Shown in pieces: positions 9,409-9,819 of a DNA stretch of 64,000 nt. How positions within the stretch are numbered: position 1 is the first letter of the stretch; every line of letters starts with the position of its first letter. Both the position numbers and the translations under genes were made by a program. Source of the DNA: Macrostomum lignano (Eukaryota); contig NIVC01003145.1 in assembly GCA_002269645.1 (NCBI GenBank), positions 1 through 64,000 of the forward strand, in the 5' to 3' direction. The notes beneath the pieces are model-generated. The model saw only the letters and a list, made by a program, of their open reading frames with translations, ran no database searches and had not been told where the DNA came from.

Positions 9409-9819
9409 CTAAGCCCTTTCGCCTCTGATGCGCCTAGCCAACTGCATGTCTTTAGGCATGATGGTGACCCGCTTGGCGTGAATTGCGCACAGGTTCGTGT
9501 CCTCAAACAGGCCAACCAGGTAGGCCTCGCTGGCCTCCTGCAGGGCGCCGACGGCAGCCGATTGAAAGCGCAGGTCGGTCTTGAAGTCCTGGGCGATCTC
9601 GCGAACCAGCCGCTGGAATGGCAGTTTGCGGATGAGCAGCTCCGTGCTCTTCTGGTAGCGACGGATCTCACGCAGGGCGACAGTGCCGGGGCGGTAGCGG
9701 TGCGGCTTCTTCACTCCGCCAGTTACCAATGGGGTTTTCCGAGCGGCCTTGGTGGCCAGACGTTTACGAGGCGCTTTGGCGCCCATGGACTTCCTAGCTG
9801 TTTGCTTGGTGCGAGCCAT
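9409..9819 (-). CDS. Divergent histone H3 variant (H3.3-derived, altered N-terminal tail)
   Basis: Intact 136-codon ORF from ATG at 9817-9819. Eight substitutions relative to the neighbouring H3.3: T11M, G13A, Q19R, S28T, A29P, P30L, S31V, I124M. Confidence 0.93.

What the first reader, a model, noticed from the sequence alone, without database searches (positions are those of the whole stretch)
9409..9819. Lineage-specific H3 variant that keeps every tail lysine but rewrites their context
Seven of eight substitutions are in the tail: T11M removes a phospho-site beside K9/S10; G13A flanks K14; Q19R follows K18; and ARKSAPS becomes ARKTPLV after K27. The histone fold is identical except I124M. 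The K27 flank is read by PRC2, by Polycomb chromodomains and by S28 kinases, and residue 31 affects K27/K36 enzymes. The protein could therefore build nucleosomes that are blind to, or re-tuned for, K9/K27 regulation. The intact ORF, many silent changes and CCAAT promoter argue against a pseudogene. I do not recognise it as a named variant.
Basis: partly seen in the sequence, partly recalled or inferred. Interest (0 to 1): 0.82.

Follow-up and report, generated by a model that had tools for sequence, protein, structure and literature searches.

The report
Unannotated tail-rewritten H3.3 paralogue in flatworm
The flatworm Macrostomum lignano carries, next to its normal H3.3 histone gene, an old, intact but unannotated inverted copy whose core is repeatedly overwritten by its neighbour while its N-terminal tail always keeps seven changes beside the K9, K14, K18 and K27 sites; it is a credible new lineage-specific histone variant, but its expression is unproven.

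Summary
Window 9409-9819 (-) is an intact 136-codon H3 gene. It differs from the H3.3 gene 1.4 kb away (7558-7968, +) by T11M, G13A, Q19R, S28T, A29P, P30L, S31V and I124M. The window is Macrostomum lignano contig NIVC01003145.1. The variant occurs in all four copies of this locus in the assembly and is absent from an older paralogous locus.

New here: divergence from H3.3 is mosaic. The tail (pS 0.66) and C-terminal codons (pS 0.60) are old. Codons 33-111 are nearly identical (pS 0.08) because the adjacent inverted H3.3 converts them. In one copy a longer tract even erases I124M. The seven tail changes survive in every copy.

The C-terminal segment shows strong purifying selection on the variant lineage (8 synonymous, 1 replacement). 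The tail is relaxed or adaptive, yet no K or R is lost.

There is no histone stem-loop. The H3.3 chaperone patch is kept. CCAAT boxes and a poly(A) signal are present.

Against function: the gene is unannotated in all four copies of a transcript-based annotation and is absent from public protein sets. No orthologue could be searched.

Verdict: probably a functional, narrowly expressed H3.3-derived variant. It is a new member of a known kind, and the proposed effect on K27 regulation is untested.

The parts
9409..9819 (-). Variant H3 ORF: 136 codons plus TAG, intronless. It carries T11M, G13A, Q19R, S28T, A29P, P30L, S31V and I124M.
   Evidence: Translation. Pfam PF00125 at 157.6 bits. Nucleotide-identical in L011, L012 and L013; the tail is identical in L014.
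9724..9819 (-). Tail-coding segment (ORF nt 1-96, codons 1-32). It is old and never converted, and it holds all seven tail substitutions.
   Evidence: pS is 0.66 against the adjacent H3.3 and 0.69 against the B-paralogon H3.3, while A against B is 0.56. At A/B-diagnostic sites it shares 3 states with A, 3 with B and 8 with neither. There are no differences among the four copies.
9485..9723 (-). Gene-conversion tract (ORF nt 97-335, codons 33-111), homogenised with the adjacent H3.3. It includes the A87/V89/G90 chaperone patch.
   Evidence: Only 5 synonymous differences in 237 nt (pS 0.08) and no replacement. It has the A state at all 14 A/B-diagnostic sites. It lies within the 95%-complementary inverted-repeat arms 7654-7967 / 9410-9723.
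9409..9484 (-). C-terminal segment (ORF nt 336-411). It is unconverted in this copy and contains I124M. In copy L014 it is overwritten by the neighbouring H3.3.
   Evidence: pS is 0.60 against H3.3. On the variant lineage there are 8 synonymous and 1 replacement change (P = 9e-5). In L014, nt 149-393 match its own neighbour and residue 124 is I.
9820..10152 (-). Upstream region (-1 to -333) with promoter-like motifs: CCAAT at 9943-9947, inverted ATTGG at 9964-9968, TTTAAG at 9897-9902.
   Evidence: Sequence read directly. Between the window and the most divergent copy (L014) there are no substitutions from -333 to +139, against 13 in the 330 nt of 3' flank (Fisher P = 1e-5) and 10 in 880 nt further upstream.
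9176..9181 (-). AATAAA poly(A) signal 228 nt downstream of the variant's stop codon. No histone 3' stem-loop is present.
   Evidence: Motif scan. Rfam gives no match at gathering threshold in the window and no RF00032 match at E <= 10 in 7000-10500.
7558..7968 (+). Neighbouring bona fide H3.3 gene (S31, A87, V89, G90). It is the convergent partner of the inverted repeat and the donor of the conversion tracts.
   Evidence: Translation. The exact protein is shared with Schistosoma and Hymenolepis. It is annotated as a gene in every M. lignano copy.
7969..9408 (.). AT-rich spacer of 1.44 kb (GC 0.31) between the two convergent genes, holding both 3' UTRs.
11612..12025 (+). Non-coding segment 'X', 1.8 kb upstream of the variant. 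Its homologue lies 166-546 nt upstream of the single H3.3 gene of the older paralogous locus, in the same relative orientation.
   Evidence: blastn: 73% identity over 414 nt to L015 17922-18302, and likewise in L016 and L017.

Best explanation
This is a selectively maintained, protein-coding paralogue of the replication-independent histone H3.3 of Macrostomum lignano.

Shown:
- It arose by a local inverted duplication at least as long ago as the split between the two CNOT9-H3.3 paralogous loci of this genome.
- It sits tail-to-tail with H3.3, 1.4 kb apart.
- The neighbour repeatedly converts the fold-coding part of the variant, so the two proteins share the nucleosome core and the A87/V89/G90 patch.
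- The first 96 nt escape conversion in every copy, so the seven tail substitutions are the constant difference.
- There is no histone stem-loop. A poly(A) signal and CCAAT boxes are present.

Inferred from established H3 biochemistry, not tested here:
- The protein should be deposited by the H3.3 pathway (HIRA or DAXX reading G90) and should form ordinary nucleosomes.
- The tail has a different modification grammar. T11 and S31 phospho-acceptors are lost.
- G13A breaks the G-K-x-P context used by GCN5 at K14.
- S28T plus A29P turns the basophilic R-K-S switch next to K27 into a T-P site. Aurora-type and MSK-type kinases disfavour such a site.
- The K27 C-terminal flank that EZH2 and K36 enzymes contact reads TPLV instead of SAPS.
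- The most likely consequence is reduced or re-tuned K27 methylation and K27-adjacent phospho-switching on chromatin that receives this histone.
- Expression is probably restricted to a narrow cell type or stage, with germline, embryo or neoblast subsets as the candidates.
For: - The ORF is intact and the tail identical in four contigs.
- Divergence is mosaic: pS is 0.66 in the tail, 0.08 in the centre and 0.60 at the C-terminus. Ends against centre differ with Fisher P = 1.4e-9.
- An independent, longer conversion tract in L014 matches that copy's own neighbour and removes I124M but not the tail.
- On the variant lineage the C-terminal changes are 8 synonymous to 1 replacement (P = 9e-5). Both ends combined give 12 to 14 (P = 0.002).
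- Only 7 of 31 tail residues are replaced, against about 14 expected neutrally (P = 0.009). None of the 10 K/R residues is hit (P = 0.02-0.04).
- GC3 of the unconverted ends is 0.58-0.68, against 0.31 GC in the spacer.
- Between the two most divergent copies there are no substitutions from -333 to +139, against 13 in the 330 nt of 3' flank.
- No stem-loop is found; AATAAA and CCAAT are present.
- There is a precedent: an H3 variant with an altered K27 neighbourhood that cannot be K27-methylated, Arabidopsis sperm H3.10 (PMC12204037, PMC10299787, PMC8948837).
- Lineage-specific, testis-enriched H3 variants are common (PMC3156773, PMC11742582).
Against: - The variant is not called as a gene in any of the four contigs. 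That annotation was built from RNA-seq transcript assemblies with an RPKM >= 0.5 filter for novel transcripts (PMC5730564). The adjacent H3.3, CNOT9 and septin genes are called each time.
- The protein is absent, in 135-, 136- and 149-residue forms and with I or M at 124, from a 15-billion-sequence collection.
- Counted by variant-specific nucleotide changes, the tail (11 replacement, 6 synonymous, 8 unresolved three-way sites) is not distinguishable from neutral (P = 0.30).
- The conservation of the fold is explained by conversion and so says little about selection.
- GC3 in the unconverted ends is lower than in H3.3 (0.58 against 0.71, and 0.68 against 0.80).
- No orthologue from another species could be examined.
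- All effects on writers and readers are inference.
Confidence: 0.55

Rival explanations
1. It is a silent or dying duplicate. On this view the inverted copy is no longer, or only negligibly, expressed. It looks healthy because the neighbouring H3.3 keeps overwriting most of the ORF, while the tail, which lies outside the usual tract, is drifting.
For: It is unannotated in four of four copies of a transcript-based annotation. It is absent from protein databases. The fold is demonstrably maintained by conversion. The variant-specific nucleotide changes in the tail fit neutral proportions (P = 0.30). Codon bias is slightly eroded in the ends.
Against: The unconverted C-terminal segment accumulated 8 synonymous but only 1 replacement change on the variant lineage (P = 9e-5). 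No stop or frameshift occurs in any copy, although end divergence is as large as or larger than that between the old A and B paralogues. Only half the neutrally expected tail residues are replaced, and no K/R is lost. Promoter, 5' UTR and tail form an island without substitutions between the most divergent copies. A recent death cannot be excluded.
Confidence: 0.28
2. It is expressed but functionally redundant. On this view the gene is simply a second H3.3 gene, and its tail substitutions are tolerated, nearly neutral changes without specific regulatory consequence.
For: The core and chaperone patch are identical to H3.3. All modifiable lysines are kept. ω in the tail is intermediate, about 0.3-0.7. 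S28T and G13A are conservative.
Against: H3 and H3.3 tails are otherwise invariant. The H3.3 protein here is identical to that of Schistosoma and Hymenolepis. The A and B H3.3 genes have no replacement despite a pS of 0.34-0.56. So seven tolerated changes in a redundant copy would be unusual. The tail escapes conversion in all four copies although tracts reach within about 45-55 nt of it.
Confidence: 0.12
3. Its role is as an RNA-level inverted repeat. Read-through across the convergent pair would give a hairpin (314 nt at 95% plus 97 nt at 77%, with a 1.4 kb loop). That hairpin could feed small-RNA pathways regulating H3.3, so the ORF itself would be irrelevant.
For: The inverted-repeat geometry is present. 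The two genes are convergent and their 3' ends lie close together.
Against: Each gene has its own poly(A) signal before the partner's coding sequence: 8310 and 9053 on the plus strand, 9176-9181 on the minus strand. An RNA function would not preserve the reading frame or produce an 8-to-1 excess of synonymous changes. No small-RNA data were available.
Confidence: 0.05

Closest known systems
Histone H3.3 (replication-independent replacement H3; here the adjacent gene 7558-7968)
   Same: The two share 128 of 136 residues. The histone fold is the same, as is the A87/V89/G90 patch. Both are intronless solitary genes outside any histone cluster, with no 3' stem-loop and with a poly(A) signal. H3.3 chains are the best matches in the PDB.
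   Different: S31, the hallmark tail residue of H3.3, is V. Six further tail residues differ. The promoter region is unrelated: CCAAT boxes here, TATAAAG upstream of H3.3. The variant is not annotated or known to be expressed.
Arabidopsis H3.10 (HTR10/MGH3), the sperm-specific H3 that cannot be K27-methylated
   Same: It is an H3.3-like variant that keeps K27 but has altered residues around it. It is reported as immune or resistant to K27 methylation (PMC12204037, PMC10299787, PMC8948837). This is the functional model for what the TPLV flank might do.
   Different: It arose independently in plants, and the substitutions are different. For the flatworm gene, germline expression and PRC2 resistance are untested.
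Mammalian lineage-specific H3 variants (H3.4/H3T, H3.5, H3.Y, mouse H3mm series)
   Same: They are young, lineage-restricted H3 or H3.3 derivatives that often have restricted expression, mainly in testis. H3.5 also changes residue 29 (PMC11742582).
   Different: Their defining changes are mostly in the fold and alter nucleosome stability (H3T V111, H3.5 L103). Here the fold equals H3.3 and only the tail differs. None shares this tail.
Oikopleura dioica male-specific H3t.1-3
   Same: This is invertebrate lineage-specific H3 innovation. [quoted passage not shown]
   Different: H3t.3 also has ten substitutions in the fold, and its expression was measured. The flatworm variant has none or one fold change and no expression data.

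Membership tests
Core histone H3 (Pfam PF00125) | A significant match to the histone-fold profile, at full H3 length, with the H3 tail | tested here: met
   PF00125 scores 157.6 bits, E = 2.1e-46, over residues 7-132. The protein has 136 residues and is 94% identical to H3.3.
H3.3-type replacement histone | Chaperone-specificity patch A87 / I or V89 / G90 in helix alpha-2 | tested here: met
   The sequence SAAVGALQ is identical to the neighbouring H3.3. The patch lies inside the conversion tract, so it may have been acquired secondarily.
H3.3-type replacement histone | Serine (or threonine) at position 31 | tested here: not met
   Residue 31 is valine in all four copies.
H3.3-type replacement histone | Polyadenylated mRNA with no histone 3' stem-loop, from a gene outside the replication-dependent cluster | tested here: met
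   There is no RF00032 match even at E <= 10. AATAAA lies 228 nt after the stop. No H4, H2A, H2B or H1 gene is present in 64 kb. Actual polyadenylation was not observed.
H3.3-type replacement histone | Broad, replication-independent expression | not testable with these tools
   No read data were available. The absence of a gene model in a transcript-based annotation argues against broad expression.
Histone pseudogene (processed or unprocessed) | Disabling mutations such as stops, frameshifts or loss of the start codon | tested here: not met
   The 136-codon ORF is intact in the window, L011, L013 and L014.
Histone pseudogene (processed or unprocessed) | A neutral substitution pattern (replacement to synonymous about 3:1 by sites) | tested here: inconclusive
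   At the C-terminus the ratio is 1:8, which rejects neutrality (P = 9e-5). In the tail it is 11:6 with 8 unresolved sites, which does not reject it (P = 0.30). The centre is uninformative because of conversion.
Histone pseudogene (processed or unprocessed) | Retrocopy hallmarks: homology extending through the parent's UTRs, and a 3' A-tract | tested here: not met
   Homology to H3.3 stops within about 14 nt upstream of the ATG and a few nt after the stop. No A-tract follows the ORF.
K27-methylation-refractory H3 (H3.10-like, a functional class) | K27 retained, with substitutions in its immediate flank | tested here: met
   ARKSAPS becomes ARKTPLV.
K27-methylation-refractory H3 (H3.10-like, a functional class) | Demonstrated failure of PRC2 to methylate K27, and germline-restricted deposition | not testable with these tools
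   This needs enzyme assays and expression or localisation data.
CenH3 / CENP-A | A divergent, non-alignable N-tail, a longer loop 1, and only about 50% identity in the fold | tested here: not met
   The tail aligns residue for residue with H3.3, and the fold is 99-100% identical.

The most novel reading that the evidence does not exclude
The variant would be an animal counterpart of plant H3.10. On this reading an H3.3-pathway histone is expressed in a narrow lineage, such as germline, early embryo or a neoblast subset. Its TPLV flank and its lost S28/S31 switch make the nucleosomes refractory to PRC2 and to K27-adjacent phospho-regulation. Selection for that tail is strong enough to resist continual gene conversion from the H3.3 gene 1.4 kb away.
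Probability: 0.15. Interest if true: 0.78.

Novelty: new member of a known kind. Interest (0 to 1): 0.5.

Why it matters
Lineage-specific H3 variants that change the context of K27 without removing the lysine are rare natural experiments on how histone writers and readers use flanking residues. The one well-studied case, plant H3.10, resets Polycomb memory in sperm.

M. lignano is a transgenic, RNAi-amenable flatworm with accessible germline and stem cells, so a gene like this could be tested directly.

The locus also shows neatly how an inverted duplicate can have its core continually homogenised while a 96-nt segment stays different in every copy. That pattern is the one expected if the tail difference is under selection. 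It also warns that 'identical fold plus many silent changes' is not in itself evidence of purifying selection.

In practical terms, the gene is missing from the public annotation.

Tried and rejected
- Exact-sequence look-ups of the variant, in 136-residue M124 and I124 forms, a 135-residue form without Met, and 149-residue forms from the upstream GTG. All were absent from the collection.
- Full-length homology search. Nothing came closer than generic H3.3 at 93-94%. Clustering at 90% could hide relatives.
- Tail-only search with 45 residues. It returned only short fragments with canonical tails. The few hits at 87-89% identity share only single changes such as G13A, S28T or V31. Only short proteins (47-79 aa) were listed, so full-length proteins may not have been candidates, which would make this search weaker than intended.
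- Degenerate DNA patterns for the K27 flank and the K9-K18 flank in metagenome contigs (two scans) and prokaryotic genome contigs (one scan). None gave a hit, as expected for a flatworm gene.
- Rfam at gathering and permissive thresholds. No histone stem-loop or other credible RNA was found.
- Pfam on the gag-like ORFs upstream. No hits.
- Folding of the three repeated 56-nt spacer elements. They are not more stable than shuffles, with z from -0.6 to -1.6.
- Window against L011 polymorphism as a test of selection. Rejected, because the stretch without differences (8992-9883) also covers the 3' flank.
- Supplementary tables of Grudniewska et al. 2016. In the stored (truncated) supplementary files, one H3F3A-like transcript (RNA1509_8448, 1835 nt, neoblast-enriched) is listed, and it cannot be assigned to either gene without its sequence. 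The 2018 supplement has nothing relevant.
- Literature searches for a described Macrostomum or flatworm H3 variant. None was found.
- A compensated-frameshift origin for the 28-31 block, based on a shared CCCCA. I considered it, but a 5-nt match is not evidence.

Full report
**What is there.**
On the minus strand, 9409-9819 is an uninterrupted 136-codon ORF encoding [38 protein letters not shown].... It matches the Pfam histone profile at 157.6 bits.

A tblastn of the five histone classes against the 64 kb finds only one other histone gene, an H3.3-type gene at 7558-7968 on the plus strand. The two genes are convergent and 1.44 kb apart. Together they form an inverted repeat with arms 7654-7967 / 9410-9723 at 95% and 7544-7640 / 9737-9833 at 77%.

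Against its neighbour the variant has exactly T11M, G13A, Q19R, S28T, A29P, P30L, S31V and I124M. The concentration of changes in the tail is non-random (P = 1.3e-4).

**Where it comes from.**
An exon of CNOT9/Rcd1 at 15.4-17.2 kb is 100% identical to a Macrostomum lignano protein (P0136). Locus L012 is GCA_002269645.1 contig NIVC01003145.1, bases 5435-28245. It is 100% identical to window 5435-28245. So the window is the first 64 kb of that contig of the Mlig_3_7 assembly.

Through members of the CNOT9 protein clusters I retrieved the other copies of the locus in the same assembly. Three further 'A-type' contigs (L011, L013, L014) carry CNOT9, the variant and H3.3 in the same arrangement. Three contigs of an older paralogous locus ('B-type', L015-L017) have a CNOT9 only 89% identical in protein. 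They carry a single H3.3 gene and no variant within 10 kb.

Ten H3.3 loci from Schistosoma, Hymenolepis and other flatworms encode the identical H3.3 protein. None has a second H3 within 10 kb.

**Mosaic divergence and gene conversion.**
This is the main new result. The 46 nucleotide differences between the variant and the adjacent H3.3 are very unevenly spread.

| Region | Synonymous proportion (pS) | Replacement changes |
|---|---|---|
| Codons 2-32 | 0.66 (dS about 1.6, saturated) | 7 residues |
| Codons 33-111 | 0.08 | none |
| Codons 112-136 | 0.60 | 1 residue (I124M) |

Ends against centre differ with Fisher P = 1.4e-9.

With the B-type H3.3 as a third sequence, the variant has the A-type state at all 14 A/B-diagnostic sites in the centre. 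In the tail it shares 3 states with A, 3 with B and 8 with neither.

Copy L014 is decisive. Its variant has the same tail, but from about nt 141 to 394 it matches its own neighbouring H3.3 (the listed variable sites nt 149-393), including sites private to that neighbour. Residue 124 is back to isoleucine.

So the adjacent H3.3 has converted the variant's fold region at least twice, with different tract lengths. The first 140 nt are untouched in all four copies. 'The fold is identical' is thus mainly a consequence of conversion. I124M is not a fixed feature. The seven tail substitutions are the only constant difference.

**Age.**
In the unconverted ends the variant is at least as far from both H3.3 paralogues as they are from each other. 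The pS values are V-A 0.64, V-B 0.70 and A-B 0.47. The V-A against A-B difference is not significant (P = 0.20).

So the duplicate dates to about the A/B split or earlier. Alternatively it has evolved faster at silent sites. A and B are not the recent whole-genome duplicates of this species. Those are at least 95% identical (PMC5730564), whereas H3.3 A against B has an overall dS of about 0.46.

A non-coding segment (window 11612-12025) lies upstream of the variant. Its homologue lies upstream of the B-type H3.3 in the same relative orientation. The variant may therefore occupy the ancestral H3.3 position, with the present H3.3 as the inverted copy. The rearrangements are too complex to settle this.

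**Is it under selection?**
I polarised the changes with the B gene. In the C-terminal unconverted segment the variant lineage has 8 synonymous and 1 replacement change. The neutral expectation is 76% replacement, so P = 9e-5. This is clear purifying selection on a translated product.

In the tail the variant-specific changes are 11 replacement to 6 synonymous nucleotides, plus 8 unresolved three-way silent sites. By that count the tail cannot be told from neutral (P = 0.30). My earlier unpolarised estimate of omega about 0.12 overstated the constraint.

Other evidence still points to constraint in the tail:
- Only 7 of 31 tail residues are replaced, against about 14 expected (P = 0.009).
- None of the ten K/R residues is hit (P = 0.04, or 0.02 if residues 28-31 changed as one block).
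- Nine of the 12 nucleotides of codons 29-32 differ, which suggests one complex event.

GC3 in the unconverted ends (0.58 and 0.68) is somewhat below H3.3 (0.71 and 0.80) but far above the 0.31 GC of the spacer.

Between the window and L014 there is no substitution from -333 to +139. That compares with 13 in the next 330 nt of 3' flank (P = 1e-5) and 10 in 880 nt further upstream. This may be a conservation island over promoter, 5' UTR and tail, or just a mosaic of recombination. A single comparison cannot separate the two.

**Gene anatomy.**
Neither H3 gene has a histone 3' stem-loop, even at E <= 10. The variant has AATAAA 228 nt after its stop (9176-9181, minus strand).

Upstream of the variant are CCAAT (9943-9947), inverted ATTGG (9964-9968) and TTTAAG (9897-9902). 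The H3.3 gene instead has TATAAAG at 7405.

Homology between the two genes ends about 14 nt before the ATG and a few nt after the stop. So the variant is not a retrocopy of the H3.3 mRNA.

**Evidence on expression is negative but indirect.**
The deposited annotation derives from genome-guided RNA-seq transcript assemblies, with novel transcripts below RPKM 0.5 discarded (PMC5730564). In all four A-type contigs it calls septin, CNOT9 and H3.3 but not the variant.

The protein, in every form I could think of, is absent from a 15-billion-sequence collection. In the stored (truncated) supplementary tables of Grudniewska et al. 2016, one H3F3A-like, neoblast-enriched transcript is listed, and it cannot be assigned without its sequence.

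I could not reach any other Macrostomum genome or transcriptome. No CNOT9 hits fall between 89% and 75% identity. The orthologue test therefore remains open.

**Mechanism.**
Shown: the histone has an H3.3 core and chaperone patch. It is probably polyadenylated and has its own promoter-like region. Its tail always escapes conversion.

Inferred from established knowledge of H3 biochemistry (my knowledge, not tested here):
- G90 directs H3.3 to HIRA/UBN1 and DAXX.
- T11 and S31 are phospho-acceptors, and S31 is specific to H3.3.
- GCN5 reads a G-K-x-P context at K14.
- Aurora and MSK kinases use the R-K-S context at S28 and disfavour proline at +1, whereas T-P is a proline-directed site.
- EZH2 and K36 methyltransferases contact residues 28-31.
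- In plants residue 31 gates the K27 monomethylases.

Arabidopsis H3.10 shows that changing the K27 neighbourhood can make an H3 immune to K27 methylation.

The most likely function is therefore a narrowly expressed replacement H3 that carries K9, K14, K18 and K27 in a different recognition context. I put about 0.55 on 'functional, specialised protein-coding gene'. I put about 0.15 on the specific PRC2-refractory reading.

**Rivals.**
- A silent or recently dead duplicate kept intact-looking by conversion: 0.28.
- An expressed but redundant H3.3 copy: 0.12.
- An RNA hairpin role: 0.05.

**Novelty and verdict.**
No described variant matches. The best PDB sequences are plain H3.3, and H3mm7, H3.6, H3T and H3.5 are no closer. 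No paper on a Macrostomum or flatworm H3 variant was found.

Lineage-specific H3.3-derived variants are a well-known kind. This is a new, unannotated member with an unusually clean 'tail-only' difference and a neat conversion history. Interest is moderate (0.5).

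Noticed in passing
L015 17346-17756, L016 16934-17344, L017 15133-15543 (older paralogous loci): M. lignano has an older paralogous CNOT9-H3.3 locus. Its CNOT9 is 89% identical in protein, and its H3.3 has a dS of about 0.46 against the window's copy. This locus has a single H3.3 gene, no variant, and gelsolin 4.7 kb upstream. In the window the gelsolin-like exon lies at 43174-43435, on the far side of CNOT9 and septin, so the block has been rearranged.
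   Followed up: partly
window 7558-7968 compared with L011 20742-21152 and L014 20174-20584: The H3.3 copies of the A-type contigs differ from each other only at silent sites. For example, the window and L011 differ at 8 sites, all in codons 40-122. At each of these sites one of the two alleles carries the variant's state. This fits conversion or shared ancestry between the neighbours. H3.3 of L014 also carries the variant/B state at nt 39.
   Followed up: partly
window 10788-11583 (-): ORFs upstream of the variant look like retroelement gag remnants. One has a CCHC-like motif, CSICNKPRHLAQAC. Another reads ...ASRWEDWSSQFLCFIQAAGV.... Neither has a Pfam hit.
   Followed up: partly
window 8614-8669, 8801-8856, 9111-9166: There are three copies of a roughly 56-nt element (core CACTACTTATTTGGGTAGTA, a short palindrome) in the spacer between the two H3 genes. 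The third sits just beyond the variant's poly(A) signal. The predicted hairpins are not significantly stable, with z from -0.6 to -1.6.
   Followed up: partly
window 12679-12874: There are two to three tandem 80-bp units, each containing CTGATTGGCTG (an inverted CCAAT box). The motif resembles the gctgATTGGtcaggctgg sequence upstream of the variant.
   Followed up: no
window 18301-22018: A very large G-skewed minisatellite has a 30-bp unit, about 125 copies and 91% matches. It lies between CNOT9 and septin. Its length differs between the A-type contigs and it generates long spurious ORFs.
   Followed up: no
window 29832-31300 and 13859-14315: The microsatellites (ACTG)n, about 365 copies, and (GACA)n, about 115 copies, lie in introns or flanks. 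The first fuses in frame with the septin first exon (around 31.4-31.56 kb) to give a spurious 589-aa ORF of SQSV repeats.
   Followed up: no
window 52.8-53.0 kb (-) and 40.3-41.9 kb (-): Other exons were seen in passing. One is a PCBP-like KH-domain exon ([28 protein letters not shown]). Further ORFs at 40-42 kb are partly made of 24-bp repeats. I did not analyse them.
   Followed up: no
Grudniewska et al. 2016 (PMC5173321) supplementary files 2 and 6: An H3F3A-like transcript is classed as neoblast-enriched and irradiation-sensitive. It is RNA1509_8448, 1835 nt long and not trans-spliced. Its length would fit an H3.3 mRNA that uses the distal poly(A) signal near 9053 and ends close to the variant's 3' end. 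It could not be assigned without its sequence.
   Followed up: partly
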